IMG/VR virus record: IMGVR_UViG_3300027770_000025
Span: 124,001 to 188,000 of that record
Reading direction: 5' to 3' (one strand)
DNA: 64,000 nucleotides
The notes under the pieces are model-generated. The model saw only the letters and a program-made list of their open reading frames with translations. It did not search any database and was not told the origin of the DNA. Shown one piece after another: positions 319 through 60,542 of the stretch. Both the position numbers and the translations under genes were made by a program. How positions within the stretch are numbered: position 1 is the stretch's first letter; every line of letters starts with the position of its first letter.

Positions 319-350
319 CAAACTTAATTAATAATCCCGGTATATAAAAA
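319..350 (-). promoter_or_regulatory. Bacteroidota-type early promoter (T-tract..CG-N11-TAAGTTTG)
   Basis: Same geometry as 10 other copies. Confidence 0.65.
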
Positions 351-389
351 TAAATTATTGGTTTATCCCGGATCCTTTATCATAAAATA

Positions 390-1001
390 GTGTATAACCC
401 CTATAAATTAATTAAAATGAAGGAGAATCAGGAGTCACGTTTAATCTCGATAATAGGTGCACCGAGTTCAGGTAAGTCCACGCTTGCAACATCTATACAT
501 CACGGATTAAAGATATCAAAAAGAAATTCTGTGTTTGTTGGGGAAGCAGCAACGGACTATATTGCAGAGTGGGGGATACCAAATACACCCACCGATCAAA
601 TCATCATATTCTATAAGCAACTCGGTAGGGAAAGAATGTATGTTGGATCTAAAGAGTTTATCATCTGTGATTCTAGCTCTATTCTAAACTACTTCTATTT
701 CAGATCTTTATTTAGCCCTGTTTTAAGCTTAAAGGATATAGCAACAATAAATCATTTACAGAAGGAAATTCTAAAGTCCTTAAGTCAGTGGCATAAAATA
801 TATTATGTCCCGCCGTTTCTTGATGAAGAAGATCAGAACGATGGTATAAGATACCATAACAAAGAGCAGATAATTAAATTGGATTTGATAATAAAGAATT
901 ATCTTGAACTTGAAAGAATTCCGTATATCGATCTTTCATCAATACCAATGGAAGAAAGAGATAAATGGATTTTGAATGATCTTACTAAACCACGTAAGTA
1001 A
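390..1001 (+). CDS. P-loop kinase/ATPase, AAA_28/NadR-like (probable start ATG 417)
   Basis: Walker A GAPSSGKST at N-terminus; IICDSS strand. Confidence 0.75.
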   Translation: MYNPYKLIKMKENQESRLISIIGAPSSGKSTLATSIHHGLKISKRNSVFVGEAATDYIAEWGIPNTPTDQIIIFYKQLGRERMYVGSKEFIICDSSSILNYFYFRSLFSPVLSLKDIATINHLQKEILKSLSQWHKIYYVPPFLDEEDQNDGIRYHNKEQIIKLDLIIKNYLELERIPYIDLSSIPMEERDKWILNDLTKPRK

Positions 1002-1445
1002 TTAGAAAACTGGTATAATAGCCCAAGGTTCTGCAGGGAGCCAATATTGTGCATCATCTATAACCTTTTGCATTTGCTGTACATTTATAGTATTTCTCCA
1101 GTTAGGAGTTTTATTTTTATTTAACCCTATATTAAACCCTGTCATACCAACCCATTTTTTGAGATACTCTTTTGTTGGCATAACTTTTTTATAAGATAAT
1201 TTTCCATCCTTATATCCCATAATATAAATCTCTTCATACAAATTAGTCATATAAACAGGTATCCCTGGCTTATTTCCGACCTTCATTCTGGATAATTCCT
1301 GAACATATTTAACCGGCATAAGAAAAACATAGCTTTTATCTTCTCTATCTTTCTGAGGATTACCCTTAATAAAAACCCATCCTCCCTGTGTCCATGGTAG
1401 GGTGCCTTCATTTAGCCAGATTTGATATTCTAGTAAGTTTTCCAC
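1002..1445 (-). CDS. Hypothetical, probable internal head protein
   Basis: N-terminus MENLLEYQIWLNE; GATATATA 4 nt upstream. Confidence 0.7.
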   Translation of the reverse strand: MENLLEYQIWLNEGTLPWTQGGWVFIKGNPQKDREDKSYVFLMPVKYVQELSRMKVGNKPGIPVYMTNLYEEIYIMGYKDGKLSYKKVMPTKEYLKKWVGMTGFNIGLNKNKTPNWRNTINVQQMQKVIDDAQYWLPAEPWAIIPVF

Positions 1446-1449
1446 ACCT

Positions 1450-1500
1450 TATATATCAAATCTATAAGATATATATAATGTAAAAAAAAACAGATATATA
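1450..1500. promoter_or_regulatory. Divergent GATATATA putative late promoters
   Basis: Motif on - at 1450-1457 and on + at 1468-1475 and 1493-1500, between divergent genes. Confidence 0.6.
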
Positions 1501-1514
1501 AAAATAAATACAAA

Positions 1515-1985
1515 ATGGAAAACATATTAGAATTTGAAACGTTTAATCCTCAAGCTACAGGATCTGCTCCAGCAGGAGTTGAAGTAGCACCTCCGGTTTT
1601 TGGTAATATAGATTTTACCATGTCGGGAGTATCTGATGATGCTATGAAGCTTATTGCAGGACTTATGGCTCAATCGGTATTAGCATCAGGTGAAGCTGAA
1701 AGAATAGCTAGAATGGCAGATACAGACCCAGCTTCGGCAGCGTCTTATCTACAAAAGAAGGTGGAAGGGATCTTAATTGGAGTTCCGGGATTAGCTCCTA
1801 CATTTATTCAGTCTATGAAATCTCAATCTTCAAATATTTCTAAGATTATGGTTCAAACAATTCCAGGATTACTTGGTAGCTTAACAGATAAAGATATTGA
1901 AGCAAACGAATTAAAACCAGATACATCTAAAGCATCTTTCCTAAGTAAACTTAGCGGATTTTTTGCTGACAATCAGGGAGCATAA
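1515..1985 (+). CDS. Hypothetical, probable internal head protein
   Basis: N-terminus MENILEFETF; late motif upstream. Confidence 0.7.
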   Translation: MENILEFETFNPQATGSAPAGVEVAPPVFGNIDFTMSGVSDDAMKLIAGLMAQSVLASGEAERIARMADTDPASAASYLQKKVEGILIGVPGLAPTFIQSMKSQSSNISKIMVQTIPGLLGSLTDKDIEANELKPDTSKASFLSKLSGFFADNQGA

Positions 1986-1990
1986 TCACT

Positions 1991-4920: not shown

Positions 4921-5268
4921 TTAATAGTTTATTACATGAACCGATATCCCCTTTTCAGTTGCAAGATCTATCATGTGTTTTGTACCTCTTGATTCGCCGT
5001 CCCAAAATGCGATTAAGCAATCTGCGTAATCGGCCATTTCTTTGTTTCTAACGTATCCTGCCGCTTTACCGTGTTTATCCCAGTCGGCAGGGAATTGACG
5101 CACGCTATAGCCTTTTAAACTGGCGTAGTGCTCACCTAACTTGTCAGCTCCTCTAGCAGTACCACTTATGATCTCAGCTTCATTGGCATTTGCCAATACC
5201 TCTTCACACTTTGTGTAAAGAAGTTGAAAATCTGAGAAGTCTCTGCTGCCTGCTATTATCACTTTCAT
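4921..5268 (-). CDS. SLOG-superfamily protein (DUF2493/YspA-like)
   Basis: MKVIIAGSRDF, IISGTARGAD, AGYVRNKEM, AFWDGESRGT. Confidence 0.85.
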   Translation of the reverse strand: MKVIIAGSRDFSDFQLLYTKCEEVLANANEAEIISGTARGADKLGEHYASLKGYSVRQFPADWDKHGKAAGYVRNKEMADYADCLIAFWDGESRGTKHMIDLATEKGISVHVINY

Positions 5269-5282: not shown

Positions 5283-5314
5283 CAATATTAATCAATACCC
5301 TCGGGAGAAAAAAA
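5283..5314 (-). promoter_or_regulatory. Early promoter copy
   Basis: T-tract..CG-N11-TAATATTG. Confidence 0.65.
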
Positions 5315-5316
5315 TA

Positions 5317-6843: not shown

Positions 6844-7320
6844 TTATTTTACACCCAAATAAGTTAATACCTCTTTCCATCCGGGAAATTGGTCTGTTCC
6901 AAAGTGGATATGTTCACCTCCGAAATCTGCAACACCATTGGCAATTCTGTCATCAATAAGGAAATCACCCTTAACCAATCCCTTATGGTGGCAGAGAATA
7001 AGCTTCTTGTTAACCGATTTACCTAAATGTGTTTCTACCCAAATTCTTTTCTCAGCCCATGCATCTGGGTTGCTCCAAGGTGGTGTACTTAAAATGTAGG
7101 TCTCGTACTTATCCTGCAAAGCAGCCCATGCACTTATTGCTCCTTCGATAGGTTCAAGATCTTTATATGCACTCGGATGTTTAAAGAGGCTTTGTCCCTT
7201 TATCCCTTGCAATTCTAGTTCTGCTGCTCTCTTATCAAAATCGCAGATAACCCCGTCGAGATCGATTAACAAAATAGGCTTTGTTATTTTAATGCTTGCT
7301 CTTAGCCACGGTTGGTCCAT
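6844..7320 (-). CDS. 5'(3')-deoxyribonucleotidase, HAD/NT5C family
   Basis: IDLDGVICDF, EKRIWVETHL, KGDFLIDDR. Confidence 0.9.
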   Translation of the reverse strand: MDQPWLRASIKITKPILLIDLDGVICDFDKRAAELELQGIKGQSLFKHPSAYKDLEPIEGAISAWAALQDKYETYILSTPPWSNPDAWAEKRIWVETHLGKSVNKKLILCHHKGLVKGDFLIDDRIANGVADFGGEHIHFGTDQFPGWKEVLTYLGVK

Positions 7321-7336: not shown

Positions 7337-7368
7337 CAAATATAATAAACAGGTACGAGGTAAAAAAA
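7337..7368 (-). promoter_or_regulatory. Early promoter copy
   Basis: TTTTTTTACCTCG-N11-TATATTTG. Confidence 0.75.
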
Positions 7369-7390
7369 TAAATAAAGGGATTTGTTGAAA

Positions 7391-10169: not shown

Positions 10170-11201
10170 TTATATATCCATGCCTCGGAGTCTCTTCTCC
10201 CATTCCCAGGCACTCTTTAGAATGTCAAAAGTGGTTAGCTTAGACTCCCAGCCTAATACTTCCTTAGCCTTTGTGGTATCGCACCAAACTTCTGCTGTGT
10301 CTCCTGGTCTTCTGTCTGCCTTTTCACAAACAATCATATCAGGTTCAACGTCCATAACAAATGTTTCTAACATTTCGTAAACTGATGTGCCTTTACCAGT
10401 TCCTATATTAAACACATCGAATGTATGTAGTTCCTGTTTGCCAAGCCATTCTAAAGAAGCTAGATGTGCCTGAGCTAAATCTGTTACGTGAATATAGTCT
10501 CTGATAGCGGATCCGTCAGGAGTTGGAAAATCAGTTCCTGTTACCTTGATTGGTTGTTCATAGTAACCCGCTGCTGCCTGTGTGATAATAGGAACTAAAT
10601 TTCCTGGCTTACCTATTGGCATCTCTCCAATCCAACCTGAAGCATCTGCTCCTGCTGGATTAAAATATCGGAGTGCTACTGATTTTAATTTTTTGATTGC
10701 TGTGCAATCATCTAATATCCATTCTCCAACAACTTTTGAAGACCCGTAAGGTGTTGTACCCTTTGATATTGGATGGGATTCGTTTATTGGTAGATAGCGG
10801 GGTTCACCATAGACAGTGCATGAACTGGAGAATATAAAATTCTTAATATCTAGGATCTCGCATAGTCTGATCGAAGTGAGCAAAGAATCTATATTGTTTC
10901 TATAATACGTCAAAGGATTTCCCACAGAATCAGGAGAAGACTTAAGTGCAGCGAAATGAATTAGTGCATCAGCTTTTCTTGAGTGCTCACCTATTACATC
11001 ATAAATATCTAGTGGAGAATCAAGAAGAGATAACTTATAAAACGTCACGGATTTACCAGCGGCTTGTTCTATTCTTTCTATTGACTCGTGTGATGAGTTG
11101 ATCAAAGAATCTATTATAATTACTTCATGGCCTGCTCTCAGAGCTTCTACTGCTGTATGTGAACCGATATATCCTGCTCCTCCTGTGATTATTATTTTCA
11201 T
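10170..11201 (-). CDS. galE: UDP-glucose 4-epimerase
   Basis: ITGGAGYIGSHT, FSSSCTVYG, YGSSK, LRYFNP, RDYIHVTDLA, RRPGD; start MKIIIT at 11201. Confidence 0.93.
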   Translation of the reverse strand: MKIIITGGAGYIGSHTAVEALRAGHEVIIIDSLINSSHESIERIEQAAGKSVTFYKLSLLDSPLDIYDVIGEHSRKADALIHFAALKSSPDSVGNPLTYYRNNIDSLLTSIRLCEILDIKNFIFSSSCTVYGEPRYLPINESHPISKGTTPYGSSKVVGEWILDDCTAIKKLKSVALRYFNPAGADASGWIGEMPIGKPGNLVPIITQAAAGYYEQPIKVTGTDFPTPDGSAIRDYIHVTDLAQAHLASLEWLGKQELHTFDVFNIGTGKGTSVYEMLETFVMDVEPDMIVCEKADRRPGDTAEVWCDTTKAKEVLGWESKLTTFDILKSAWEWEKRLRGMDI

Positions 11202-11211
11202 ATACTGTTTT

Positions 11212-11358
11212 CTAGCTCGGTTCTTTTTTATCTTCCGTATCAATAAATAATTTTGCACACTTGTACCCGATCCACATTCCGATTGAAATACCTAAACATA
11301 AACCACCGAAGAATAATCTCATCTCCATTGGTGTAAAAACCTCATTGATTGTTCCCAT
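11212..11358 (-). CDS. 48-aa single-pass membrane protein
   Basis: Not in ORF track. Hand translation MGTINEVFTPMEMRLFFGGLCLGISIGMWIGYKCAKLF... fills the gap between genes. Confidence 0.6.
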   Translation of the reverse strand: MGTINEVFTPMEMRLFFGGLCLGISIGMWIGYKCAKLFIDTEDKKEPS

Positions 11359-11359
11359 G

Positions 11360-12451
11360 TTACTTCTCTTTTAATAAAAACGTATTTGATATAGCTTTGA
11401 AAGAAACGCTCTTGTCTTTGTTTCTAATAACTATACCTTCTCTATCTGTTAACCCATTCAATCTTGACTTGTCATCAGCATATCTGATGATCTCATCGAT
11501 AGTTGGTGGTAATTTGTAATCGTAATTAACAACCGGTACAAGCTCTAGTGGTTTGTTATCAACATTTACTTTTTGTAGAAAATGCACCATGTCATCAAGG
11601 CCAAGGTATTCTTGAGTGTCTATATTGAAGATGTTAAAGATTAATACTGTTTGACCCTTGAGCTTATATGCATTACCTTGAATTCCCTCTCCGATAAGCT
11701 CACCCTGAATTGCATAGTTCTCTTCTAGAGTTCCTAATTTTTCTTCGATATGCAATTCTCTTGCAACCTTCCAGAATGTATTCCCTTCACTTTCTAATAG
11801 CTCCAGATTTCTGGAACACACCCCAAACACACCATCTCTAAAGTAGTATGTTGCAGAACTACCATCGAGCTTTTCTGTAACATAATATGGCTTATCCTTC
11901 ATGCTCTCGTATTCAGCAGTCATGTTCTGGATTCTTTCCTCATCAGTTTTTCTAATGAATCCAGGGAATCCGCCTTTAACTTTTCCTGATAATTCTGCTG
12001 GGATCGGCGGTTCGTATTTGAGGACACACATGTAAGCTGTAACATCAGCTCCCTCTTCGATAACTATTGCATCATCATAAGGTCCAAGCTGAAGTTGGTC
12101 ACCCCAAGGTTGTTTACTGATCCCGATTTTCATTTCATCATCCTTTTCCAGAACGCTTAACGGTAAGCAAAGTCCCTGTGAAACTTGCCCCTTTAATTTG
12201 ATGGTTCTTAATCTGAATCCTTCTAAGTCACCCATCTTTCTGTAAGATGATTTTCTTAGGAATTCGAAATCTTTTTCCATCGGTAAGAATGAATCGATTT
12301 CGAAGTAAACACAAAGATCCCCTTCTTTAAATTCTCCCTTCTTAGTAACAACCCTCCAAGAGTTAATTGTTACCATTTCTATTGCGTCTGCTCCCATAAT
12401 GGGCAATACTGATCCTATCCTTTGGATGGATGCTAATTTTCTATTTTCCAT
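11360..12451 (-). CDS. RNA ligase, Rnl2/DRB0094 family
   Basis: RKLASIQRI N-domain, YFEIDSFLP, TEKLDGSS, QGELIGEGIQ, REGIVIR, FKAIS. Confidence 0.88.
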   Translation of the reverse strand: MENRKLASIQRIGSVLPIMGADAIEMVTINSWRVVTKKGEFKEGDLCVYFEIDSFLPMEKDFEFLRKSSYRKMGDLEGFRLRTIKLKGQVSQGLCLPLSVLEKDDEMKIGISKQPWGDQLQLGPYDDAIVIEEGADVTAYMCVLKYEPPIPAELSGKVKGGFPGFIRKTDEERIQNMTAEYESMKDKPYYVTEKLDGSSATYYFRDGVFGVCSRNLELLESEGNTFWKVARELHIEEKLGTLEENYAIQGELIGEGIQGNAYKLKGQTVLIFNIFNIDTQEYLGLDDMVHFLQKVNVDNKPLELVPVVNYDYKLPPTIDEIIRYADDKSRLNGLTDREGIVIRNKDKSVSFKAISNTFLLKEK

Positions 12452-12673: not shown

Positions 12674-13129
12674 TTATTGTTCTTCGGATATCTTATTGAT
12701 TGTTTGTGAAATTATTTCATTATAGGGTAGCCATTCCAATGTCATTTTTTCCTTTTTGTAAGCAGCCGGAACGTGGCATCCGTGATTTTCCATCGGTATC
12801 AATGCTCTGCATTGAGCAGGTCTAGCTTCAAAAGATTTTGAACAACCAGTTTCCGTTAAGAAAACACATTCACCTCCCCAGGATCCGTCTACTATTTTAC
12901 CAACAGATTTCTTAGTCTGTGGTCTTAAATAATAGAGCGTGATGTCTTCGTGTTCAGGTTTACCCGTCATATTCCCTTCCCAGTAATCAAATTGATACCC
13001 TTTTTTAAAAAGGTCGCTTAGAGATTCGACAGTTATTTCACTTAGATCTTTAGGTGAAACTATCCCCGGCATTCCTTTGCAGCATTTACCGCATTTAGAA
13101 CACAGTGATATATTTTCGTTATTTTCCAT
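12674..13129 (-). CDS. YkgJ-like cysteine-cluster (CxxCxxCC) protein
   Basis: CSKCGKCC, CVFL..GC...RPAQC. Confidence 0.8.
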   Translation of the reverse strand: MENNENISLCSKCGKCCKGMPGIVSPKDLSEITVESLSDLFKKGYQFDYWEGNMTGKPEHEDITLYYLRPQTKKSVGKIVDGSWGGECVFLTETGCSKSFEARPAQCRALIPMENHGCHVPAAYKKEKMTLEWLPYNEIISQTINKISEEQ

Positions 13130-13158: not shown

Positions 13159-13190
13159 CAAATTTATAACATATGGGCGAGATAAAAAAA
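13159..13190 (-). promoter_or_regulatory. Early promoter copy
   Basis: TTTTTTTATCTCG-N11-TAAATTTG. Confidence 0.75.
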
Positions 13191-13225
13191 TATTATTTGA
13201 TAATTTTATCGGATATATAAGTCAC

Positions 13226-22134: not shown

Positions 22135-23274
22135 TTAATCTTTTTTAATCCATTTTGAATCTGCTGGAATTTCTTCTTCCTTATTCCAGAAAGGTTTTTG
22201 GTATTTCGGTTTTATCATTTTCCATATGATGTGATCGTAATTCTTTCTGTCCCACATTGCAAAACAGATAGATCTTATGCTTGGTTCAACCCCACAAAAT
22301 TCTAAGTGCTCTGCAAATTCTTTTTTGGTAGGCTCGGGATCACGATCCCTATATTTTCCATATCTGAAATAGTCATGGGTTTTACCTGCTCTTTCCCCTA
22401 TTCTATATTTATAATATTGCAAATCGCTTATTGTCTCTTTAACCCATTTATCGAACTCATCTGGCACTCTATCTAAAAACTCGTCCAGGCTCTTACCATC
22501 TTTTAAAAGCTCCCAGATATCAACGTTTGAAAAGCTGGTTAGCAACCTATGTAGCCTAACGTACTCCTCACCTTTGATCTTCATTCTGAATCCAGATTTG
22601 AATTTGATTACAAATCCTTCCGCATTGCTCTCGATCATAGATTTCAGCTGTTTGTAATCCTGAACGCCGTCGTACTTCTTAACGATCTTAAATCCTAGGT
22701 TGTTGTAGAGATTAACAAATCTAATACCTTCAAGGTGTATGTCATTGTCATGTATTCTAAGCTCGTAGCCATCCTTGTTATCAATAACAGCAAGCATAAC
22801 CAAATCTTCATATCCATAATCAACTACGATTCTATTTTCAGGGTAGAGGATCTCAAAAAGGTAGGTGAATCCAGGAATTAGTTTATCGTACCTGTATTTG
22901 CTTAGTATCTCCTTACCTTTTATTGCCTGCTCAGAAACAAAGGATCCTCTGGTAGCTAAATGCCAGTCACCTTCGTAGTGGAAAAGAATCCCTAATGATC
23001 CGTCCATCTTTTCAAACACCTCAAACTCCTCATTAGGAATTTCTTCCGGCTTGTGCTCTTCCATATTAAAGAATTTTGGAAAAGTTCTAGCCACAATGTT
23101 ACCCTCACGATCTAAAACTGTACCCCTCATATTTAGCGTAACACTATCCCAAGCTTCGCTATATTGACAATCTCTTGAATAGTTATAAATATCAAGAGGC
23201 AATGTTGGGTGAGAATTCTTAATTAGAAGTCCACGCTCAATATAATCGTTCAATATGTTTAAATCATATTTCAT
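22135..23274 (-). CDS. T4 Rnl1-like RNA ligase
   Basis: RGTVLD..FPKFFN, EKMDGSLG, ATRGSF, FEILYPENRIVVDY, EGFVI, KIKGEEY. Confidence 0.88.
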   Translation of the reverse strand: MKYDLNILNDYIERGLLIKNSHPTLPLDIYNYSRDCQYSEAWDSVTLNMRGTVLDREGNIVARTFPKFFNMEEHKPEEIPNEEFEVFEKMDGSLGILFHYEGDWHLATRGSFVSEQAIKGKEILSKYRYDKLIPGFTYLFEILYPENRIVVDYGYEDLVMLAVIDNKDGYELRIHDNDIHLEGIRFVNLYNNLGFKIVKKYDGVQDYKQLKSMIESNAEGFVIKFKSGFRMKIKGEEYVRLHRLLTSFSNVDIWELLKDGKSLDEFLDRVPDEFDKWVKETISDLQYYKYRIGERAGKTHDYFRYGKYRDRDPEPTKKEFAEHLEFCGVEPSIRSICFAMWDRKNYDHIIWKMIKPKYQKPFWNKEEEIPADSKWIKKD

Positions 23275-23276: not shown

Positions 23277-23744
23277 TTAGAGAATTTTATTATCGTTGTC
23301 AAGTTTTCTTTCTATGTGTGCTGCAATATCAATGATGGAGTTGCTATCAATCCAATTGTAACTTTCCCCGTTAAACACAACAGAGAAATCTCCGTCAGTC
23401 CAATCATAAACAGCTTTATCAAATTTCTTGATCTCGACTGTCTGCTTGTTAAGTTCATTTATTAGATCGTTAAATATCTTAGATCCTCCTCTATTTCTCT
23501 TGCTTCTCGTTCCAAAATATTGTGTACCCTCGTGATTAGCGCATCTTAGCATAAGATGCAGTGTCTTGTAATCCTTTACCTTCTCGTAATTGTCAAGAAT
23601 GTAAATCTTTGCTGCTTCTACAAGAGATCTTGTTTCTGCAGAAAGTTCTATGTAGAGGATTTCAAAGTTTCCACCGTTATATTTTTTACCCCCTCTGATT
23701 ACGGAAAGAACTTCTTCTTCACCTTTTGATACGTCTACTAGCAT
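23277..23744 (-). CDS. Hypothetical protein, first gene of the RNA-repair operon
   Basis: ORF directly under an early promoter. Confidence 0.7.
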   Translation of the reverse strand: MLVDVSKGEEEVLSVIRGGKKYNGGNFEILYIELSAETRSLVEAAKIYILDNYEKVKDYKTLHLMLRCANHEGTQYFGTRSKRNRGGSKIFNDLINELNKQTVEIKKFDKAVYDWTDGDFSVVFNGESYNWIDSNSIIDIAAHIERKLDNDNKIL

Positions 23745-23768: not shown

Positions 23769-23800
23769 CAATATTAAATAAATCTTTCGGGGTAAAAAAA
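23769..23800 (-). promoter_or_regulatory. Early promoter copy
   Basis: TTTTTTTACCCCG-N11-TAATATTG. Confidence 0.7.
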
Positions 23801-23898
23801 TTAAATCGGAAGTTTTACCCCACTTAAAAAGAATATTGGGACGTGGGCATAAATTTCTGTTGTTTTAGGGGAACCCGTAATTGAAAATATAACCCAAA

Positions 23899-26665: not shown

Positions 26666-26697
26666 CAAAAGTAATATCTGGCTACGGATAAAAAAAA
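26666..26697 (-). promoter_or_regulatory. Early promoter copy
   Basis: TTTTTTATCCG-N11-TACTTTTG. Confidence 0.7.
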
Positions 26698-26757
26698 TAT
26701 TTCCGCAAAAAAAATTCCAACCTTTTGAGCTGGAATTTTAAAATTATGAGGTTATTC

Positions 26758-34343: not shown

Positions 34344-34434
34344 AACTTTTTTTATTTTATATTTTAATTACAATACAAATATAAGACCCATTCACGGGAT
34401 AAAAAAATTTTTATGGGGATTTATTAATATTTTT
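34269..34434 (-). repeat. Copy 1 of 166-bp early promoter + signal-peptide block (copy 2 at 36187-36352)
   Basis: Manual alignment shows 5 mismatches and no gaps; includes the early promoter at 34376-34407. Confidence 0.95.
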
Positions 34435-34474
34435 TAGCAGGCTAGATCTATTATACATCAAATTTGGAATAATT

Positions 34475-35751: not shown

Positions 35752-35764
35752 GTATAATATCAAA

Positions 35765-35803: not shown

Positions 35804-35817
35804 GGTCTTTGATTTTA

Positions 35818-36261: not shown

Positions 36262-36352
36262 AACTTTTTTTATTTTATATTTTAATTACAATACAAATAT
36301 AAGACCCATTCACGAGATAAAAAAATTTTTCTGGGTATTTATTAATATTTTT
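36187..36352 (-). repeat. Copy 2 of early promoter + signal-peptide block
   Basis: See 34269-34434; promoter at 36294-36325. Confidence 0.95.
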
Positions 36353-37978: not shown

Positions 37979-38010
37979 CAAATGTATTATAAACTCCCGA
38001 GGAAAAAAAA
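37979..38010 (-). promoter_or_regulatory. Early promoter copy
   Basis: TTTTTTTTCCTCG-N11-TACATTTG; back-to-back with GATATATA on + at 38022-38029. Confidence 0.75.
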
Positions 38011-38046
38011 TAAAAGCGGGGGATATATAAAACAAAATTAAAAAAT

Positions 38047-38664: not shown

Positions 38665-39486
38665 ATGTTATTAAAAAACGGGTCTAAAGGGGAAGACGTT
38701 AAAAAACTCCAAGCAAAATTAGGTGCTACCGCAGACGGAAATTTTGGTCCAGGTACGGAAGCAAAAGTAAAAGCGTGGCAATCAGCTAATGGATTAGTAG
38801 CAGACGGCGTTGTAGGAGATGGAACTTGGGCTAAGATGTTTGGCTCTGCTCCAGTAGCAGCAGCTCCAGCAGCTATTCCAGCTTCATCTTTTAAATTGGA
38901 AGCTCTGAGAGGTCACATTCCTGATGCAGTTATTGCGCAAATCCCAGATACAGCAGCTAAATTTGGTATTACGAATACCCTAAGACTAGCTCACTTCTTA
39001 GCTCAGTGCGGTCACGAATCTGGTGGATTCAAAGCAGTTAATGAAAATCTTAACTACTCAGCTGATGGTCTTAAAAAGATCTTCCCTAAATACTTCCCTG
39101 GAAATTTAAACGAGTCTTATGCAAGACAGCCGGAGAAAATTGCTAATAAGGTGTACTCATCTAGAATGGGCAACGGAGACGAAGCATCTGGTGATGGATA
39201 TCGATATAAAGGTGCGGGTTTTATCCAATTAACAGGCAAAAGCAACTATGCTGCTTTTGATAAATTTGTTGATGATGACATATTAGCAAATCCCAATTTA
39301 GTTGCAACCAAATATCCATTAGCCTCTGCAGCATTCTTTTTTAATTCAAATAAGCTTTGGTCTATATGTGATAAAGGAGCTGATGATGCTACAGTGACTG
39401 CGGTTACGAAGCGTGTAAACGGTGGCACAATCGGGCTAGCTGATAGAATTAAACACTTTAAGGAATACTATAATCTACTTAAATAA
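38665..39486 (+). CDS. Endolysin: PG-binding domain + GH19 lysozyme
   Basis: GEDVKKLQ..DGNFGPGT; LAHFLAQCGHESGGF, ENLNYS, GFIQLTGKSNY, TKRVNGG. Confidence 0.92.
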   Translation: MLLKNGSKGEDVKKLQAKLGATADGNFGPGTEAKVKAWQSANGLVADGVVGDGTWAKMFGSAPVAAAPAAIPASSFKLEALRGHIPDAVIAQIPDTAAKFGITNTLRLAHFLAQCGHESGGFKAVNENLNYSADGLKKIFPKYFPGNLNESYARQPEKIANKVYSSRMGNGDEASGDGYRYKGAGFIQLTGKSNYAAFDKFVDDDILANPNLVATKYPLASAAFFFNSNKLWSICDKGADDATVTAVTKRVNGGTIGLADRIKHFKEYYNLLK

Positions 39487-49371: not shown

Positions 49372-49749
49372 TTATTTAGATTTATAGTTTTCTTCTAGAT
49401 ATTCCCAGGTCGATTTAACAGAATAAAAAATAGGCTTTCCGTTTTCGTCCGTTGCACCGTATTTCTTTTTCTTTGATTTTTTTACCTTGACCATCTTACC
49501 GTCAATGGTTTCATACGTGTCTAGGTTTCCCTTATTCCAATCTTTCTCACCATACTCAGCTTCGTAACAGAACCAGCTGAACCAGTCAGCTCCTTCCTCT
49601 CCATATACCTCTTTAATTAGTATATTTATTATGTGATGTAGCCCGTCCGCAAAATCGTAAACGTCTATGCCAACCTTATGTGCTTTCTGCACTGAAGAAT
49701 CATACTCTTTTAGGCGATCTATGATTTCAGAAAATTCTTTATATTCCAT
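49372..49749 (-). CDS. Hypothetical protein
   Basis: ORF under an early promoter. Confidence 0.7.
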   Translation of the reverse strand: MEYKEFSEIIDRLKEYDSSVQKAHKVGIDVYDFADGLHHIINILIKEVYGEEGADWFSWFCYEAEYGEKDWNKGNLDTYETIDGKMVKVKKSKKKKYGATDENGKPIFYSVKSTWEYLEENYKSK

Positions 49750-49781: not shown

Positions 49782-49812
49782 CAAATATAATGATTCTTTG
49801 CGGGGATAAAAA
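49782..49812 (-). promoter_or_regulatory. Early promoter copy
   Basis: TTTTTATCCCCG-N11-TATATTTG. Confidence 0.75.
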
Positions 49813-49832
49813 TATTTAATGGTATATAGATT

Positions 49833-50048
49833 ATGAAACCTAGCAAAGAATATTTAGATCATATAGCTAAAAGACTCGAAGCAATGAATCCCAATATAGT
49901 TAACGGGGTTAACATTATACAGGAGCCATATAAAATGCCAAGCTTCGAGGACCAATTAGGTCAAACAGCAATGGCTTATTTAGCAAACAAAAAAAATCAG
50001 GAACACGCAGCTCCTGATCCTCTTTTTCCTGATAGAAACTCCTACTGA
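49833..50048 (+). CDS. Small hypothetical protein
   Basis: ORF with a variant late motif (GTATATAG) just upstream. Confidence 0.55.
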   Translation: MKPSKEYLDHIAKRLEAMNPNIVNGVNIIQEPYKMPSFEDQLGQTAMAYLANKKNQEHAAPDPLFPDRNSY

Positions 50049-51730
50049 TTCGGTTTCCTGGTAATCACATAATTCCCTATACAAAGTGCATGCAGATTTC
50101 TTCCCCAGAATGTTCTGATCGCATGATAGGGCGATTCAACTATAGGCTCGTCAGGTCCATTAAAACTAGTATTGAGAACAAGGGGTATACCACTTATTGA
50201 TTCGAATTCGGAAATCAATTTATGATAATATAGGTTGGATTCTTTAGTTACTGATTGATATCTTGAAGTTCCGTCTATATGAACCACTGATGGTATTTTA
50301 GATTTCCACTCTTCTCTAACCCTCGCGGTCACCATCATATAAGGGGAATAAACATCAAGATCAAAAACATCCTTTTGTTTTTCGAAAAGAACCGAGGGAG
50401 CAAATGGTCTGTACCATTCCCTTAATTTAATGTCATGATTAATATGGTCTTTCATCCATGAGCATTTAGGTGAAGCTATTATCGACCGGTTACCTAAAGC
50501 TCTTGGACCAATTTCAGATCCTCCTTGGAATAGACCAATAACTTTATTTTGATTAATTAACGAAGCTACATTTTTAATTTGTTCGGATTTATCCCGATAT
50601 AGCTCAATATTAACCAGGTCACCAAATTCAAACTCTGATGAAGCTTTATCTATGTCATCTTTTATCTGGAGATCCGAATACGATCTCCCCATGTATGGAT
50701 TAAGGTACTTTCCTTTATGTGCTCCCCCGCTTTTAACGTAACCCCACCAAGCACAACCTAATGGTATACCGCTATCATCTGAACACGGAACGAAATACTG
50801 ATCTTTATATAAACCAGATTTTATGATCATCTCGTTCGTGTTGCAGTTTAGAAAAGATCCTCCGGCAACGCAAACATTCTCGGATCCAGTTAATCTTTTA
50901 GCCATTTCAACCAGATGAATTGAATTCTGTTCCTGATCCCTTTGATATAATCCAGCAACATTTGCTTTGGAATAGAAGTCAGATTTGTAATCAACCTCTG
51001 GCATTATCTTAACCGAAGGTATAAAGATGTCATACTCTCTTAAAGTTGTATGTGAAGGGATTTGGTTAACCCACTCCTGATCTGCATATGAAGCTAGTCC
51101 CATAAGTTTCCCCGCTGGCCATGAATGTGTTTTTGTATCATATACAAGTTGGAGAGATCCCTTCGTGTATTGTTCGCCTATTGATGTTTCCGAATTTTCG
51201 TCTATAAGCATTGGATACTTTATCAACTTCTTGTAAACCTCTCGATCTTCTTCCTGAGAGAACTTATAAATAGTTATACCTTCTGCATATTCATAATCCT
51301 CTGTACCTGGCCATTCCTGATTAAACCACTTTAGAGCATTGCTATTCCTTTTCAAAACGCTACCCATAGCATCAGCAACAACAACCGCAGCTTCAGAAAA
51401 GCCAGAGCTATAAAAGGTTGAATACGCATGGGCCAAGTGATGAGGAATGAAATGAAGTCTGCTTTTACCGATTCCAAAGGTCTTCTCGAAAGAATCAGCT
51501 ACAACATCATCATCCTCTACCGTATCAAATGTCCATCTGTCAACGTCTGAATACTCAAAACCGAGATATTTCAGGCAGTAATCTATAGATTCCACGGGTA
51601 AACCAGTGCTATATGCGCCATCATGTTTCACTCTAGTGATCCTTTCCTGTGATATACCCACTTTAACCTCTCCGTCTACTATGATTACACAGCCTTTATC
51701 GTGTCCTACTGAAAATCCTAAGCTTACCAT
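50042..51730 (-). CDS. Carbamoyltransferase, NodU/CmcH family
   Basis: HD..ERITRVKH, HHLAHA, AGKLMGLASY, AGGSFLNC, DDSG, EIGPRALGNRS, REWYRPFAP, VHIDGTSRYQ, LNTSFN. Confidence 0.92.
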   Translation of the reverse strand: MVSLGFSVGHDKGCVIIVDGEVKVGISQERITRVKHDGAYSTGLPVESIDYCLKYLGFEYSDVDRWTFDTVEDDDVVADSFEKTFGIGKSRLHFIPHHLAHAYSTFYSSGFSEAAVVVADAMGSVLKRNSNALKWFNQEWPGTEDYEYAEGITIYKFSQEEDREVYKKLIKYPMLIDENSETSIGEQYTKGSLQLVYDTKTHSWPAGKLMGLASYADQEWVNQIPSHTTLREYDIFIPSVKIMPEVDYKSDFYSKANVAGLYQRDQEQNSIHLVEMAKRLTGSENVCVAGGSFLNCNTNEMIIKSGLYKDQYFVPCSDDSGIPLGCAWWGYVKSGGAHKGKYLNPYMGRSYSDLQIKDDIDKASSEFEFGDLVNIELYRDKSEQIKNVASLINQNKVIGLFQGGSEIGPRALGNRSIIASPKCSWMKDHINHDIKLREWYRPFAPSVLFEKQKDVFDLDVYSPYMMVTARVREEWKSKIPSVVHIDGTSRYQSVTKESNLYYHKLISEFESISGIPLVLNTSFNGPDEPIVESPYHAIRTFWGRNLHALCIGNYVITRKPNQ

Positions 51731-56421: not shown

Positions 56422-57633
56422 TTAATTTGATAAAGGTGCTTTAATTGAAGGGTGTGATTGGTAATTTTCAACAACAAAATCAGTATTATCCAAATGTGTG
56501 ATTAAACTTAAATCTTCACCTAAGGATTTATAAAAATTATCGGTCTTCATATGTTTTAATGTTGGTAACGGAAATGGATCTCTAGTTTTTACCCTCGGGA
56601 TATCCCATTGATCAATCTCTAAATGTGATAGAGTTTCAGGGCCTCCAGCATTATAGATTTGATTAAACATTTCTTGTGTAACCATTTCTCTTCTTTCCTC
56701 CAGACTCAGAACCCTACCAATTTGTTCTTTCGCTTGCTCAATGTGATTCAAATACAAATGGGTATCCCCCAAGTTGCCAATTAGCTCATCGGGTACCATA
56801 TCCACTGCTTTTGCAATGATTTCAAGTAACAAACCGTAACTAGCAATATTAAACGGTAAACCTAAGAATGTATCTACTGAACGCTGATTCCACATTAAAG
56901 AGATTGCTCGGGTTGGAATATTGTAATCATCCCATCCTTTTGGAGTCATTGGTCCATTTATAGCATATGATTCTTTTATGGTTGAATTTGTTAATGCTAG
57001 CTGCTCTCGTTCATTGTAACTTAACTCTCTTGTATAAACTTGAAATCCATAATGACAAGGTGGAAGAACCATTTGGTCTAATTCACCTACATTCCAAGCA
57101 TTAACCATTAATCGTCTTGAGTCTGGATTTGTTTTAAGGTCGTTAATTAGATTTTGGATTTGGTCTATTTGTTTTGTATAAACACCAGGGTCAACTATTT
57201 TCTCATCACGAGTTGCATTTCGGTTCCAACTTCTCCATTGCTTTCCATACACAGGTCCAAGGTCACCCCACTTCTTAGCAAACTCATCATCTGTTTTGAT
57301 TTTGTTTATGAATTCTTGATAAGTACAACCTTTGATCAATTGTCTTGATTGCTGTTCACAATAGTTCTTATAAGCATCACCATCCCAAATATGACAATTA
57401 TTATCAACAAGGAACTTAATGTTTGTATCACCACGCAAGAACCACATTAGTTCTGTTGCGATAAGTCTGAACGGCATCTTCTTTGTTGTAAGTAATGGAA
57501 ACCCCTCACTCATTTTATGTCTAATCTGTCTACCAAACACTGAAAGAGTACCACCGTTTCTTGTTTCTTTTTTTACACCATTATCAAGGATGTCTTGTAG
57601 GAGTAATTGGTATTGTTTATCTAGGTTATTCAT
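56422..57633 (-). CDS. thyA: Thymidylate synthase with three insertions
   Basis: FPLLTTKK, ELMWFLRG, IWD, LGPVYGKQWR, SRR, LPPCH, QRSVD..LGLPFNIASY, HLYLNH. Confidence 0.95.
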   Translation of the reverse strand: MNNLDKQYQLLLQDILDNGVKKETRNGGTLSVFGRQIRHKMSEGFPLLTTKKMPFRLIATELMWFLRGDTNIKFLVDNNCHIWDGDAYKNYCEQQSRQLIKGCTYQEFINKIKTDDEFAKKWGDLGPVYGKQWRSWNRNATRDEKIVDPGVYTKQIDQIQNLINDLKTNPDSRRLMVNAWNVGELDQMVLPPCHYGFQVYTRELSYNEREQLALTNSTIKESYAINGPMTPKGWDDYNIPTRAISLMWNQRSVDTFLGLPFNIASYGLLLEIIAKAVDMVPDELIGNLGDTHLYLNHIEQAKEQIGRVLSLEERREMVTQEMFNQIYNAGGPETLSHLEIDQWDIPRVKTRDPFPLPTLKHMKTDNFYKSLGEDLSLITHLDNTDFVVENYQSHPSIKAPLSN

Positions 57634-58451: not shown

Positions 58452-58522
58452 TAGCCAGGACAGGAATCGAACCTGTGTACTCCGACTTAAAAGGTCGGGC
58501 TTTACCATTAAGCCACCTGGCT
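58452..58522 (-). tRNA. trnK: tRNA-Lys(UUU), 71 nt, CCA not encoded
   Basis: Hand fold: AGCCAGG/CCTGGCT acceptor, GCTT/AAGC D stem, CCGAC/GTCGG with CTTTTAA loop, ACAGG-TTCGATT-CCTGT T arm. Confidence 0.85.
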
Positions 58523-58532: not shown

Positions 58533-58832
58533 TTATTTATTATATTCTTCCCAATTGCTATATTTTAATCCCCATTGTAAATTATTCCACATCATTTCAC
58601 GTTCGGCTAATGCTTTATTCATTTTAAGATTTTTACGTAGGTAAGCAATCCCCCATTTTTTCCATTCTTCAGACTGCTCAACAGTCATTAAGTATTCTAA
58701 AAACCATTTATCTTTACCTAAAATGTCATTATAAGTAACATCATAACCGGCAATAATAAACATTTGGTTAATCAAGTCAACAACTGCTTTTTCTCGTTTT
58801 TGGTCTCTAGTTAATCGTTTTTTAGTTTCCAT
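58533..58832 (-). CDS. Hypothetical protein
   Basis: Packed ORF. Confidence 0.65.
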   Translation of the reverse strand: METKKRLTRDQKREKAVVDLINQMFIIAGYDVTYNDILGKDKWFLEYLMTVEQSEEWKKWGIAYLRKNLKMNKALAEREMMWNNLQWGLKYSNWEEYNK

Positions 58833-58862
58833 AATTCATTCTTTCCCTTTACGAATCTTATT

Positions 58863-59054
58863 TTAATCCCCATTTTCCGTGCTTATTTCTCCGGTTTCCA
58901 AATCAAACCAAACTGTCTCTGGCCCTTCGTTACCCATCTGTGATAGAGCTTTCTGCAGCATTGGTCCTAAAACTTGATTCATCCATTGATCCTGGGTCAG
59001 ATCAGAATCTGGATTATCCTTTAGGTAATTTTTGTACTGTGATTCTAATGTCAT
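58863..59054 (-). CDS. Small hypothetical protein
   Basis: Packed ORF. Confidence 0.55.
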   Translation of the reverse strand: MTLESQYKNYLKDNPDSDLTQDQWMNQVLGPMLQKALSQMGNEGPETVWFDLETGEISTENGD

Positions 59055-59072
59055 ATCAATTTATTTTTAATA

Positions 59073-60068
59073 TTAATGTGATCCGAAGCCAACCTCTTTT
59101 TGCTTCTTACCTTTTGGCGTTTTTTTCATACCCTTAAGATGCTCTATCGCATTTTCGTATTTGTTGTCTAGCAACACAACAGAAATGAAAAGTTCTTTTA
59201 AATGAGACATAGAAAGATCCTCAGTATCATCTAACCATTTCTCGATGTTGATATCAATTTTATTATCTCCGATTTTATTTTCCAGGTAGGATTTTCTAAC
59301 CTCTCTAGAAGGTGGGGAAACGTAATATCTTCGGTCAAACCGTGAGGGTCTATTAGTAATCCTTTCCTCTAGTTTTTCTGGATAGTTCGTTGTTGCTATG
59401 TAAACAACATTTTCAATTTGTTTAATTCCGTCAAGAATATTAAGTAACACTGAAGTTGAATAATTACTATCCCCTGCAACGCTATCGATATCTTCGATAA
59501 CAACAACTAGCGGACGATTAGGTTCAATTTGTCTTAACTTTGGAACCATTTCAACATATGCTTTGATAGAGTCTTCGTTTTTAATATTGATAACAACACC
59601 AGATAACTCCCTGATGATGTGCATCATGCAAAGCTGTAAAATACCTGACTTACCACATCCAGGATCTCCATATAAAAGAATACCTCTTTTGTGCATAAGC
59701 TTATATGATTTATAAAGTTCTGCTTTTTTCCAGAATGATTTTATATCAGTTAGGATTTCTCCAATCTCAACTGTTGGAAGCTCATATAACTCATCGGTAT
59801 TAATGGCTTGTCTCATTACACACCACTCATTGGCTCTGCCATTCCATTCAAGTTCATATAGACCAGCAGGAAGTTGTTTCTCTGCTTTAGGAGCTGCGAT
59901 ATAACTACCGTCGCCCATCACAGACCACTGTGCAAAATCTAGTTTTTTCTCCTCATCCACCGAATCTGATGGAACAGCTTCAACATTAAGATAGTCATCA
60001 ACTTCTATTTCAATATTTGGCATACCTAAATCTGCCAGTAATCTTTCCTTAATTCTTCTGCTTGCCAT
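59073..60068 (-). CDS. AAA+ ATPase
   Basis: GILLYGDPGCGKS, VIEDID, LLNILDG, ATTNYPEKL, RPSRFDR. Confidence 0.92.
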   Translation of the reverse strand: MASRRIKERLLADLGMPNIEIEVDDYLNVEAVPSDSVDEEKKLDFAQWSVMGDGSYIAAPKAEKQLPAGLYELEWNGRANEWCVMRQAINTDELYELPTVEIGEILTDIKSFWKKAELYKSYKLMHKRGILLYGDPGCGKSGILQLCMMHIIRELSGVVINIKNEDSIKAYVEMVPKLRQIEPNRPLVVVIEDIDSVAGDSNYSTSVLLNILDGIKQIENVVYIATTNYPEKLEERITNRPSRFDRRYYVSPPSREVRKSYLENKIGDNKIDINIEKWLDDTEDLSMSHLKELFISVVLLDNKYENAIEHLKGMKKTPKGKKQKEVGFGSH

Positions 60069-60160
60069 TTTATGTAGATTATATTATTTTATATTTTTGA
60101 ATATTTTTTAGTTTCGGTTTAATCCTCACTAAATAGTGGGTTTGGTTTTTTATGAACATA

Positions 60161-60505
60161 CTAATTCCAATTGTTAGCTAAATAATTTATAATAAAATAC
60201 GAGATCTTATACCCAGTAAAAGCACCAAGTGCTGAGGGTATCGGAAACACTATTAGTTTTCCGAGATCGGTTACATACTTTGGTCTGTTTACAATTCTCC
60301 CTAAGTAAGAATAATAAACAAGATAACTCACTAATACAGCAAAGTCAACCCTTGTTGCTATAAAAACAACCAGGGTAGCACTAATAAATCCATAAATGAA
60401 ATTATCCCTAACTCCTTCCCAAATCTCTGCCGTGGTAGCATCTTTATATTCCTTAACTATTTTATTAATCGAAGTAATCTTTTTACCAGGTTTCTGTATT
60501 TCCAT
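60161..60505 (-). CDS. Membrane protein
   Basis: Multiple hydrophobic segments; under an early promoter. Confidence 0.7.
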   Translation of the reverse strand: MEIQKPGKKITSINKIVKEYKDATTAEIWEGVRDNFIYGFISATLVVFIATRVDFAVLVSYLVYYSYLGRIVNRPKYVTDLGKLIVFPIPSALGAFTGYKISYFIINYLANNWN

Positions 60506-60510
60506 TTCTA

Positions 60511-60542
60511 CAAATATAATGTTTGACTACGTATTAAAAAAA
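60511..60542 (-). promoter_or_regulatory. Early promoter copy
   Basis: TTTTTTTAATACG-N11-TATATTTG. Confidence 0.7.

What the first reader, a model, noticed from the sequence alone, without database searches (positions are those of the whole stretch)
319..60542. Eleven copies of a rigidly spaced early promoter: T-tract...CG-N11-TAnn(T/A)TTG
Seen: copies at 319, 5283, 7337, 13159, 23769, 26666, 34376, 36294, 37979, 49782 and 60511, all on the - strand. Each has a CG exactly 11 nt upstream of the octamer, preceded by a T-tract that often reads TTTTTTAYCY. Established: TAnnTTTG is the -7 element of the Bacteroidota primary sigma factor, whose usual -33 element is TTTG. Inference: the host is Bacteroidota, and the invariant CG/T-tract is a phage-specific upstream element, either a strong-promoter variant or an activator box as with T4 MotA, marking the early regulon.
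Basis: partly seen in the sequence, partly recalled or inferred. Interest (0 to 1): 0.62.

Follow-up and report, generated by a model that had tools for sequence, protein, structure and literature searches.

The report
Phage-private promoter box in Bacteroidota jumbo phage
The eleven repeats are real promoters of the early and DNA-metabolism genes of a 349-kb T4-like phage of Bacteroidota: they keep the host-type -7 element but replace the host -33 element with a phage-specific box, and the phage carries its own copy of the main sigma factor that may read that box.

Summary
All 11 sites exist, and a position weight matrix (PWM) scan finds exactly these 11 in the window. The window is bases 124001-188000 of a 348,582-bp virus record that holds about 60 copies (0.2 expected by chance).

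The consensus is A-T7-A-T-C-C-C-G (-37 to -24), then N9-yT, then TAHHTTT(G/A) (-12 to -5), with A at +1. An ATG follows the octamer by about 20-30 nt.

This is the genome's only sigmaA-type promoter class. It precedes small unknown ORFs, RNA ligases, a Dda-like helicase, thymidylate synthase, dCMP deaminase, tRNAs and a phage-encoded RpoD-like sigma. A second class, GATATATA(A/G), precedes tail sheath, portal, protease and endolysin genes, and fits the gp55-like late sigma.

The CG is strongly preferred (C 89%, G 81%) but not invariant. It is weaker in a sister lineage.

The composite motif was found in 0 of 406 Bacteroidota genomes, so the upstream box is phage-specific. No MotA or AsiA homologue is present.

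My best reading is pre-late promoters that host sigmaA can fire through the -7 element. The private box is most likely read by the diverged region 4.2 of the phage sigma. That last step is inference, at about 45%. No transcript data could be obtained.

The parts
319..351 (-). Class-1 promoter (weakest T-tract): ATTTTTATATACCGG-N..-TAAGTTTG. Predicted +1 at 314. First ORF starts with ATG at 281 and runs off the window.
   Evidence: (26.4 bits)
5283..5315 (-). Class-1 promoter with octamer TAATATTG. A terminator hairpin lies just upstream. Predicted +1 at 5278. ORF 4921-5268 has a GTP-binding domain.
7337..7369 (-). Class-1 promoter. Predicted +1 at 7332. ORF 6844-7320 is nucleotidase/HAD-like.
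   Evidence: (38.2 bits)
13159..13191 (-). Class-1 promoter. Predicted +1 at 13154. It heads a unit with ORF 12674-13129, RNA ligase 11360-12451 and epimerase 10170-11258.
23769..23801 (-). Class-1 promoter with octamer TAATATTG. Predicted +1 at 23764. It heads a unit with ORF 23277-23744 and an RnlA-like RNA ligase at 22135-23274.
26666..26698 (-). Class-1 promoter; the box is shifted by one (T8-ATCCG). Predicted +1 at 26661. It heads small ORF 26418-26645, followed by a Dda-like helicase at 24671-26119.
34376..34408 (-). Class-1 promoter, near consensus (40 bits). Predicted +1 at 34371. ORF 33741-34343 has an N-terminus that looks like a signal peptide (by eye).
36294..36326 (-). Class-1 promoter, a duplicate cassette of 34376 with the same spacer and leader. 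Predicted +1 at 36289. ORF 35818-36261.
37979..38011 (-). Class-1 promoter. Predicted +1 at 37974. ORF 37268-37945 resembles a DNA polymerase exonuclease subunit.
49782..49814 (-). Class-1 promoter with a short T-tract (T5-ATCCCCG). Predicted +1 at 49777. ORF 49372-49749.
   Evidence: (21.9 bits)
60511..60543 (-). Class-1 promoter (T7-AATACG). Predicted +1 at 60506. The ATG at 60505 makes the mRNA nearly leaderless. ORF 60161-60505, then an ATPase-like ORF at 59073-60068.

Best explanation
**What it is (shown from sequence).** The motif is the pre-late (early plus delayed-early) promoter class of a T4-superfamily jumbo phage of Bacteroidota. In my numbering the T of TA is -12.
- The octamer TAHHTTT(G/A) at -12 to -5 is the -7 element of a sigmaA-type holoenzyme.
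- Transcription should start at the conserved A five nt further on.
- The 13-nt box A-T7-ATCCCG at -37 to -24 occupies the place of the host -33 element (TTTG) and the promoter-proximal spacer.
- This is the only sigmaA-type promoter class in the genome.

**How it most likely works (inferred).** Host RNA polymerase with host sigmaA must fire these promoters at the onset of infection, using the perfect -7 element. Bacteroidota promoters depend mainly on that element. One of the first products is the phage's own RpoD-like sigma, whose gene carries the same promoter. I propose that this sigma reads the private box through its region 4.2 helix, which has diverged from the invariant host sequence. 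RNA polymerase would then be channelled to phage promoters in a self-reinforcing loop.

**The switch to late genes.** A gp55-like sigma would later switch transcription to the second class, GATATATA(A/G), in front of virion and lysis genes.
For: **Promoter identity**
- Rigid two-part motif with about 60 copies against 0.2 expected.
- Copies lie on the gene strand, with the octamer end mostly 15-39 nt before an ATG.
- A at +1 in 81% of sites and almost no G at -10/-9. Both match F. johnsoniae promoters.
- The spacer is not conserved, while the motif columns are.

**Pre-late class**
- Downstream genes include RNA ligases, a Dda-like helicase, thymidylate synthase, dCMP deaminase, tRNAs and many small ORFs.
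- GATATATA sites precede tail sheath, tail fibre, portal, prohead protease, head-closure and endolysin genes.
- No gene carries both classes.
- A gp55-like sigma is present.
- No canonical TTTG-type promoter exists in the genome.

**The box is phage-specific**
- 0 of 406 Bacteroidota genomes hold the composite motif.
- The looser ATTTTTTTATC-N14-octamer gives 5 single hits in 151 Flavobacteriales genomes, against 22 in the phage.

**Conservation in relatives**
- The same box occurs at the same distance in phages whose sigma is only 42-73% identical.

- It is a complete sigma with regions 2, 3 and 4.
- Eight host sigA sequences have an invariant LTRERVRQI. The phage family varies there, and G000 has SSERIRQIY.
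- Candidate promoter sites on viral contigs with the phage-type sigma show CG at -25/-24 in 31%, T6 in 36% and TTTG in 3%. On contigs with a host-like sigma the figures are 1%, 8% and 18%.
- The sigma gene has its own class-1 promoter in at least 10 lineages.
Against: - No transcript data.
- The sigma gene itself sits behind a class-1 promoter and no host-type promoter exists. Host sigmaA must therefore recognise the class, so the phage sigma may not be needed for it.
- Phage sigma region 2.4 differs from the host's (WHIRKEM against WWIRQSI), yet the -7 element looks fully host-like.
- The match between 4.2 helix type and box type follows the sigma tree. There are only 2 independent contrasts, so there is no statistical power.
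- The relative G004 has the phage-type sigma but also canonical TTTG promoters.
- C-26 to G-24 lie beyond the usual reach of region 4.2.
Confidence: 0.5

Rival explanations
1. Host sigmaA alone reads the whole motif. The box would be a phage-evolved 'super-consensus' that makes early promoters outcompete host promoters, as T4 early promoters do in E. coli. The T-tract would act as a TTTG-like or DNA-shape element. The phage sigma would serve another purpose.
For: - Class 1 is the only sigmaA-type class and must start the infection, including the sigma gene.
- The -7 element obeys host rules in detail.
- TTTT lies where TTTG would lie at a 19-bp spacing.
Against: - Not one of 406 host-phylum genomes uses the composite motif.
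- Related phage lineages carry quite different sequence-specific boxes at the same place (AACGCATTACC, TTGTCAGG, TC-N8-TACGG), although host sigA region 4.2 is invariant.
Confidence: 0.27
2. A separate phage-encoded DNA-binding activator reads the box at about -30 and recruits host sigmaA holoenzyme. This would work like T4 MotA/AsiA sigma appropriation without being homologous to it.
For: - The box is centred near -30 and replaces the -35-like element while a host-type downstream element is kept. That is the layout of T4 middle promoters (my knowledge).
- The box is lineage-specific.
Against: - No MotCF or AsiA homologue is present.
- The box also precedes what must be the first genes transcribed, before any activator exists.
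- No candidate activator gene was identified.
Confidence: 0.15
3. The T-tract is the U-tail of intrinsic terminators of the upstream genes, and its link to the octamer is incidental. Alternatively, the copies are merely duplicated cassettes.
For: - A few sites (window 5283 and 26666; genome 225899, 87581) have a strong hairpin just before the tract.
- Sites 34376 and 36294 are duplicates.
Against: - Only 21% of sites have such a hairpin, against 13-18% in controls.
- The tract-to-octamer distance is rigid.
- Spacers and flanks differ between copies.
- The motif recurs in phages whose sigma is only 42% identical.
Confidence: 0.03

Closest known systems
Bacteroidota sigmaA (sigma-ABfr) promoters, -33 TTTG / -7 TAnnTTTG
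   Same: - The -7 octamer, with T-12, A-11, T-8, T-7, T-6 and G-5.
- No G at -10/-9.
- A start 4-5 nt after the element (PMC6847099).
   Different: - The -33 TTTG is absent: G is 5% at the expected place, and 0 canonical sites exist.
- A 13-nt box at -37 to -24 stands in its place, and the composite motif was not found in 406 host-phylum genomes.
- G-5 is A in 23% of sites.
T4 middle promoters (MotA box at -30 plus sigma70 -10, with AsiA)
   Same: A host-type downstream element is kept, and the -35-like element is replaced by a phage-specific box centred near -30. The genes served are pre-replicative (my knowledge of T4).
   Different: - No MotA or AsiA homologue is present.
- The box sequence is unrelated.
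- The class includes the genes that must be transcribed first.
- The phage has its own RpoD-like sigma, which T4 lacks.
T4 early promoters
   Same: A phage-specific, information-rich version of the host promoter. It sits in front of many small ORFs packed with one promoter each, in a T4-like genome (genome 74-97 kb).
   Different: T4 keeps a recognisable -35 read by host sigma70. Here the -33 element is replaced.
Phage-encoded sigma70-family factors that redirect host polymerase (SPO1 gp28, phiEco32 gp36)
   Same: A phage sigma replaces the host sigma on host core polymerase and reads phage-only promoters (my knowledge; SPO1 context in PMC13401047).
   Different: - Those sigmas are highly diverged and read promoters that differ in both elements.
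- SPO1 early promoters are host-like.
- Here the sigma is a close paralogue of host sigA (35-41% identical), and the -7 element is unchanged.
T4 late promoters (TATAAATA, gp55)
   Same: This applies to the second class seen here. GATATATA(A/G) has no -35-like part, lies 5-33 nt before virion and lysis genes, and comes with a gp55-like sigma.
   Different: The core sequence differs. No test of gp33 or clamp dependence was made.

Membership tests
Bacteroidota sigmaA-type promoter | -7 element TAnnTTTG (TAHHTTTG) | tested here: met
   The octamer was used to select the sites. Among the 57 sites, G occurs at -10 in 1 and at -9 in 2. G-5 is 77% G and 23% A.
Bacteroidota sigmaA-type promoter | Transcription start 4-5 nt downstream of the -7 element | not testable with these tools
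   Sequence only: A in 81% of sites five nt after G-5. No RNA data.
Bacteroidota sigmaA-type promoter | -33 element TTTG about 19 bp upstream | tested here: not met
   G is 5% at the expected position. None of the octamer sites near ORF starts that lack the T-tract has TTTG at a spacing of 17-21.
T4 MotA-dependent middle promoter | MotA and AsiA proteins encoded | tested here: not met
   PF09158 and PF09010: no match at E up to 1 in the 348.6-kb genome.
T4 MotA-dependent middle promoter | MotA box (a/t)(a/t)(a/t)TGCTTtA centred at -30 | tested here: not met
   The box here is A-T7-ATCCCG. The MotA consensus is from my own knowledge.
T4-type late promoter (second class, GATATATA) | Short AT-rich -10-like element without a -35 part, before virion genes, with a gp55-like sigma | tested here: met
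   - 14-fold enrichment in intergenic gaps.
- The upstream profile is flat.
- Downstream genes include tail sheath, portal, protease and endolysin.
- phrog_234 late sigma at 4e-15.
Intrinsic terminator tail | G+C-rich hairpin directly before the T-run | tested here: not met
   21% of sites have a minimum free energy (MFE) of -8 kcal/mol or lower, against 13-18% in controls.
Group 1/2 sigma70-family factor (the phage RpoD-like protein) | Regions 1.2, 2, 3 and 4 present | tested here: met
   - Sigma70_r2 at 60 bits and r4 at 26 bits.
- r1_2 and r3 appear in precomputed Pfam hits of close kin.
- RpoS/RpoD models score 1e-52 to 1e-47 but below equivalog cut-offs.

The most novel reading that the evidence does not exclude
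A large family of uncultured, mainly freshwater, Bacteroidota jumbo phages carries a paralogue of the host primary sigma factor. It keeps a sigmaA-like -7 reading but has a fast-evolving region 4.2. Each phage lineage has a matching private box in place of the host -33 element: A-T7-ATC(CCG), T-tract-N5-CG, TC-N8-TACGG, AACGCATTACC or TTGTCAGG. These would be natural orthogonal sigma-promoter pairs. They would let the phage privatise host RNA polymerase by replacing sigma, rather than by MotA/AsiA-type appropriation or a phage polymerase.
Probability: 0.4. Interest if true: 0.78.

Novelty: new variant of a known kind. Interest (0 to 1): 0.6.

Why it matters
**What is ordinary.** Phage-specific early promoters and phage sigma factors are both known kinds.

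**What appears undescribed.** Three paper searches found no account of this promoter code or this sigma family in Bacteroidota phages. The one paper on freshwater Bacteroidota jumbo phages has no promoter analysis.

**What it gives if the sigma-box pairing holds.**
- A way, by sequence alone, to split the genes of a whole family of uncultured jumbo phages into pre-late and late sets.
- A natural series of orthogonal sigma/promoter pairs for Bacteroidota. Transcription tools are scarce in this phylum.
- A testable third route, sigma replacement by a close paralogue, by which T4-like phages take over host polymerase.

Tried and rejected
- **Megablast** of 20 kb of the window against isolated phages: no match. 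A protein search with the sigma found no close isolate; the Lak Prevotella megaphages are 28% identical.
'of' needs a G handle.
- **Metagenome contigs** fetched by the look-up of encoding contigs are not held for whole-record searches. Promoter data for P0059 and P0119 therefore stay thin.
- **MotA/AsiA homologues:** none.
- **Terminator-tail reading of the T-tract:** rejected.
- **Host-type strong-promoter reading:** rejected, as the composite motif is absent from the host genomes searched. The single full match in a Flavobacteriales genome (L170) is a chance hit in a 25.5% G+C bacterial locus with no phage homology.
- **Third abundant promoter class** for the ECF sigma: none found among 71 remaining upstream gaps.
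- **Rfam** on the window and the early region: only one tRNA.
- **Phylogeny-aware test** of 4.2 helix against box type: only 2 independent pairs, so no power.
Full report
**1. What the window is**

The window is bases 124001-188000 of a 348,582-bp IMG/VR virus record. The record has 36% G+C and is rated complete by CheckV.

A greedy ORF call gives about 425 genes, roughly 85% of them on the - strand. That alone explains why all copies of the motif lie on that strand.

The phage belongs to the T4 superfamily:
- It encodes a gp55-like late sigma (phrog_234, 4e-15), which lies next to gp4-like head-closure and gp2-like genes.
- It also encodes T4-type RNA ligases, a Dda-like helicase, thymidylate synthase, dCMP deaminase, tail sheath, portal and prohead protease.
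- No isolated phage is close.

A 2025 paper describes freshwater Bacteroidota jumbo phages of 200-307 kb, but it contains no promoter analysis (PMC12619734). I did not test whether this phage belongs to that group.

**2.

All eleven sites are present.
- CG-N11-TANNWTTG gives 14 matches against 3.1 expected.
- With the T-tract added, the count is 12 against 0.63.
- The octamer alone is not enriched: 91 against 77.

To avoid circularity I anchored only on TAnnTTTG lying 5-120 nt upstream of ORF starts across the genome. The 372 other octamers are flat.

Genome-wide figures:
- The exact pattern occurs 38 times; the reversed control occurs 0 times.
- A PWM finds 62 sites at 14 bits or more, against 0.2 in shuffles.
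- The two halves are rigidly coupled. Of 44 copies of the upstream half, 32 have the octamer exactly 11 nt downstream and a few more have it at 12 nt.

**3. Anatomy**

I number positions as in Flavobacterium johnsoniae, with the T of TA at -12 (PMC6847099). The figures below come from 57 sites selected without using columns -28 to -24.

| Position | Base | Frequency |
|---|---|---|
| -37 | A | 88% |
| -35 to -31 | T | fixed by the selection pattern |
| -36 | T | 93% (not used in selection) |
| -29 | A | 68% |
| -27 | C | 75% |
| -26 | C | 68% |
| -25 | C | 89% |
| -24 | G | 81% |
| -23 to -16 | any | not conserved |
| -15 | T | 72% |
| -14 | C | 60% |
| -13 | T | 77% |
| -10 / -9 | G | 1 and 2 of 57 sites |
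| -5 | G / A | 77% / 23% |
| +1 | A | 81% |

- The avoidance of G at -10/-9 and a start 4-5 nt after the element are the properties reported for F. johnsoniae promoters. In that organism the -33 element is weak.
- The octamer end lies mostly 15-39 nt before an ATG. Leaders would therefore be about 10-35 nt. Site 60511 is almost leaderless.
- The CG is strongly preferred but not invariant. Strong sites read ATCCCA, ATCTCT or ATCCTG.
- Only 21% of sites have a strong hairpin just before the T-tract, against 13-18% in controls. The tract is therefore not mainly a terminator tail.

**4. Two promoter classes and their genes**

A k-mer scan of the intergenic gaps that lack the motif found a second class, (G)ATATATA(A/G). 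It is enriched 14-fold. It lies 5-33 nt before about 90 ORFs and has no conserved upstream part.

Fifty-four genes carry class 1, 88 carry class 2, and none carries both. No third abundant class is left.

| Class | Genes headed |
|---|---|
| 1, in the window | Two RNA ligases, Dda-like helicase, polymerase-exonuclease-like protein, thymidylate synthase, nucleotidase-like protein, many small unknown ORFs |
| 1, elsewhere | dCMP deaminase followed by an ECF sigma, the RpoD-like sigma, a tRNA gene (genome 120785; the site at 46483 overlaps a tRNA start), and a dense 74-97 kb block of small ORFs with one promoter each |
| 2 | Tail sheath, tail fibre, portal, prohead protease, head-closure protein, endolysins, a UvsW-like helicase |

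- Class 2 is therefore the late class and fits the gp55-like sigma.
- Class 1 is pre-late.
- The genome has no canonical TTTG-N17-21-octamer promoter at all. Class 1 must therefore include the first promoters used after infection.

**5. The box is not a host feature**

- TTTTTTAYCYCG-N11-TANNTTTG was not found in 5 named plus 401 sampled Bacteroidota genomes. The phage holds 17 copies in 0.35 Mb.
- The looser ATTTTTTTATC-N14-TANNTTTG gave 5 single hits in 151 Flavobacteriales genomes, with 1 in the control. The phage holds 22.
- The only full match is a chance hit in a 25.5% G+C bacterial locus.

**6. A phage copy of the primary sigma factor**

The genome encodes three sigma-family proteins:
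- a 304-aa RpoD/RpoS-like protein (genome 70285-71199, + strand);
- a 210-aa ECF type;
- the 119-aa gp55-like protein.

The RpoD-like protein has only Bacteroidota sigA as bacterial kin, at 35-41% identity. It belongs to a large metagenomic family that forms a continuum from 98% down to 40% identity.

Comparison with eight host sigA sequences:

| Region | Host sigA | Phage family |
|---|---|---|
| 2.3-2.4 | Invariant YAVWWIRQSILQA | Its own conserved version, FAVWHIRKEMLK |
| 4.2 recognition helix | Invariant LTRERVRQI(K/R)EKA | Hypervariable |

- G000 reads SSERIRQIY in region 4.2.
- The arginine equivalent to E. coli R584 is lost. This rests on the alignment to solved SigA chains and on E. 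coli numbering from my own knowledge.
- The T-tract/ATC part of the box lies at -37 to -27. That is where region 4.2 of a sigma70-family factor sits (established knowledge).

**7. Relatives**

Promoters in related phages:
- Phages with a sigma 42-73% identical to G000's carry the same box at the same distance. These are the G001/G002/G005 lineage and L161, L162, L163, L164, L166 and L167.
- In G002 the CG is weaker (C 55%, G 65%), and ATCTG or ATCTA are common.
- In L178 and L180-L193 the conserved parts are the T-tract and C-25/G-24, with variable bases between them.
- Other lineages keep the octamer but have other boxes. G003 has TC-N8-TACGG. The lineages with E-W-A-R in helix 4.2 have AACGCATTACC or TTGTCAGGTTTG. 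G004 has canonical TTTG-N20 cassettes plus a looser T-tract class.

Sigma type against promoter features:

| Viral contigs | Loci | Candidate sites | -33 TTTG | T6 | CG at -25/-24 |
|---|---|---|---|---|---|
| Host-like sigma (WWIRQ, TRERVRQI) | 30 | 170 | 18% | 8% | 1% |
| Phage-type sigma | 36 | 162 | 3% | 36% | 31% |

(All.)

The sigma gene has its own class-1 promoter in G000, L161-L163, G002, L166, L167, L177, L180 and L182.

A caveat applies to all of this. On a tree built from sigma residues 1-225, the T-tract trait is largely clade-structured. Clade I has it in 16 of 17 scored rows. Only two independent contrasts exist for helix type against box type. The covariation is therefore suggestive, not demonstrated.

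**8. Mechanism**

*Shown:*
- A rigid bipartite motif in promoter position before pre-late genes.
- A -7 part that is host-like.
- An upstream part that is phage-specific.
- A phage-encoded sigmaA paralogue with an altered 4.2 helix, which is itself a member of the regulon.

*Inferred:*
- Host holoenzyme fires the class first through the -7 element.
- The phage sigma then reads the box and concentrates polymerase on phage DNA.
- gp55-like sigma takes over at GATATATA sites.

*Weights:*

| Claim | Probability |
|---|---|
| The motif is a promoter class | about 0.9 |
| The class is pre-late | about 0.8 |
| The box is read by the phage sigma | about 0.45 |
| The box is read by host sigmaA alone | about 0.27 |
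| The box is read by a separate activator | about 0.15 |

- No MotA or AsiA homologue exists. The T4 middle-promoter comparison is therefore an analogy of layout, not family membership.
- Against the sigma-reader step: region 2.4 differs from the host's although the -7 element does not, and G004 keeps TTTG promoters.

**9. Limits**

- No transcript data could be obtained.
- ORFs come from a simple greedy caller.
- Candidate sites in related loci include chance octamers.
- Several related loci are fragments.

Noticed in passing
window, last base of ATATATA. + strand: 1475, 1500, 9063, 13219, 30576, 32283, 34487, 38029, 39495. - strand: 8585, 10171, 24592, 30571, 48247, 53579, 62334.: A second promoter-like class, (G)ATATATA(A/G), lies 5-33 nt before ATG with no upstream element. 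It resembles T4 late promoters. In the window it heads all the + strand gene islands, including the endolysin at 38665-39483. Genome-wide it precedes virion genes.
   Followed up: yes
L029:1342-2256:+ (genome 70285-71199); L030:1177-1809:-; L031:1426-1785:-: There are three phage sigma genes. One is a full RpoD-like paralogue of Bacteroidota sigA. One is an ECF-type sigma downstream of dCMP deaminase. One is a gp55-like late sigma. No promoter class could be assigned to the ECF sigma.
   Followed up: partly
L013/L014, genome 74-97 kb (e.g. 81666, 82220, 82775, 83511, 84943 on the - strand): About 20 copies of a third repeat, (G/A)AACCGYTGTCAACGTTCCCGC, lie in non-coding stretches. Several sit about 100-135 nt upstream of a class-1 promoter. 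The core CGTTG-T-CAACG is a near-palindrome and may be an operator. In some copies it folds into a 5-bp stem with the loop CUGUCAA. There is no Rfam or tRNA match.
   Followed up: partly
L029:1245-1341 (leader of the sigma gene); also L161, L162, L163 upstream of position 10001: The sigma gene has an unusually long leader of about 90 nt after its class-1 promoter. One block (ACAGAAnCCCACCnCATTGGTGTT) is conserved between lineages whose sigmas are 61-73% identical to G000's. It may be a regulatory 5' UTR.
   Followed up: no
genome 74-97 kb and related loci L163, L166, L167: Leaders after class-1 promoters share yATnAACCAAnTAAAAC just before the ATG. E-W-A-R-type lineages share CTTATAACTTAA instead. 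This may be a translation or stability signal in a phylum without Shine-Dalgarno use.
   Followed up: no
window 32283-36326: This is a duplicated module. Two near-identical class-1 cassettes, with the same spacer, leader and N-terminus (MKKLI...), lie at 34376 and 36294. Two similar class-2 promoters at 32283 and 34487 head paralogous + strand ORFs at 32302-33675 and 34513-35751.
   Followed up: partly
window 58452-58522 (-); genome 45-47 kb, 55.5 kb and 120.7 kb: The phage carries tRNA genes: one in the window (Rfam, 67 bits), plus His, Cys, Arg (two kinds), Met and one unassigned elsewhere. The class-1 site at genome 120785 lies directly upstream of the tRNA-Met gene. The one at 46483 overlaps the start of the unassigned tRNA, so it may not be a working promoter.
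   Followed up: partly
L204+L239 (IMGVR_UViG_3300036770_006296); L219+L224 (IMGVR_UViG_3300042307_001176): Some related viral contigs carry two RpoD-like genes. One has host-like regions 2.4 and 4.2, and the other is of the phage type. This is what one would expect if the two read different promoter classes.
   Followed up: no
window 56422-57633 (-): The thymidylate-synthase-family protein is 403 aa, which is longer than I would expect for ThyA. The window also has a nucleotide-sugar epimerase-like ORF (10170-11258) and a carbamoyltransferase (50042-51730). Together these hint at modified DNA bases. That would matter for a promoter box containing CCCG.
   Followed up: no
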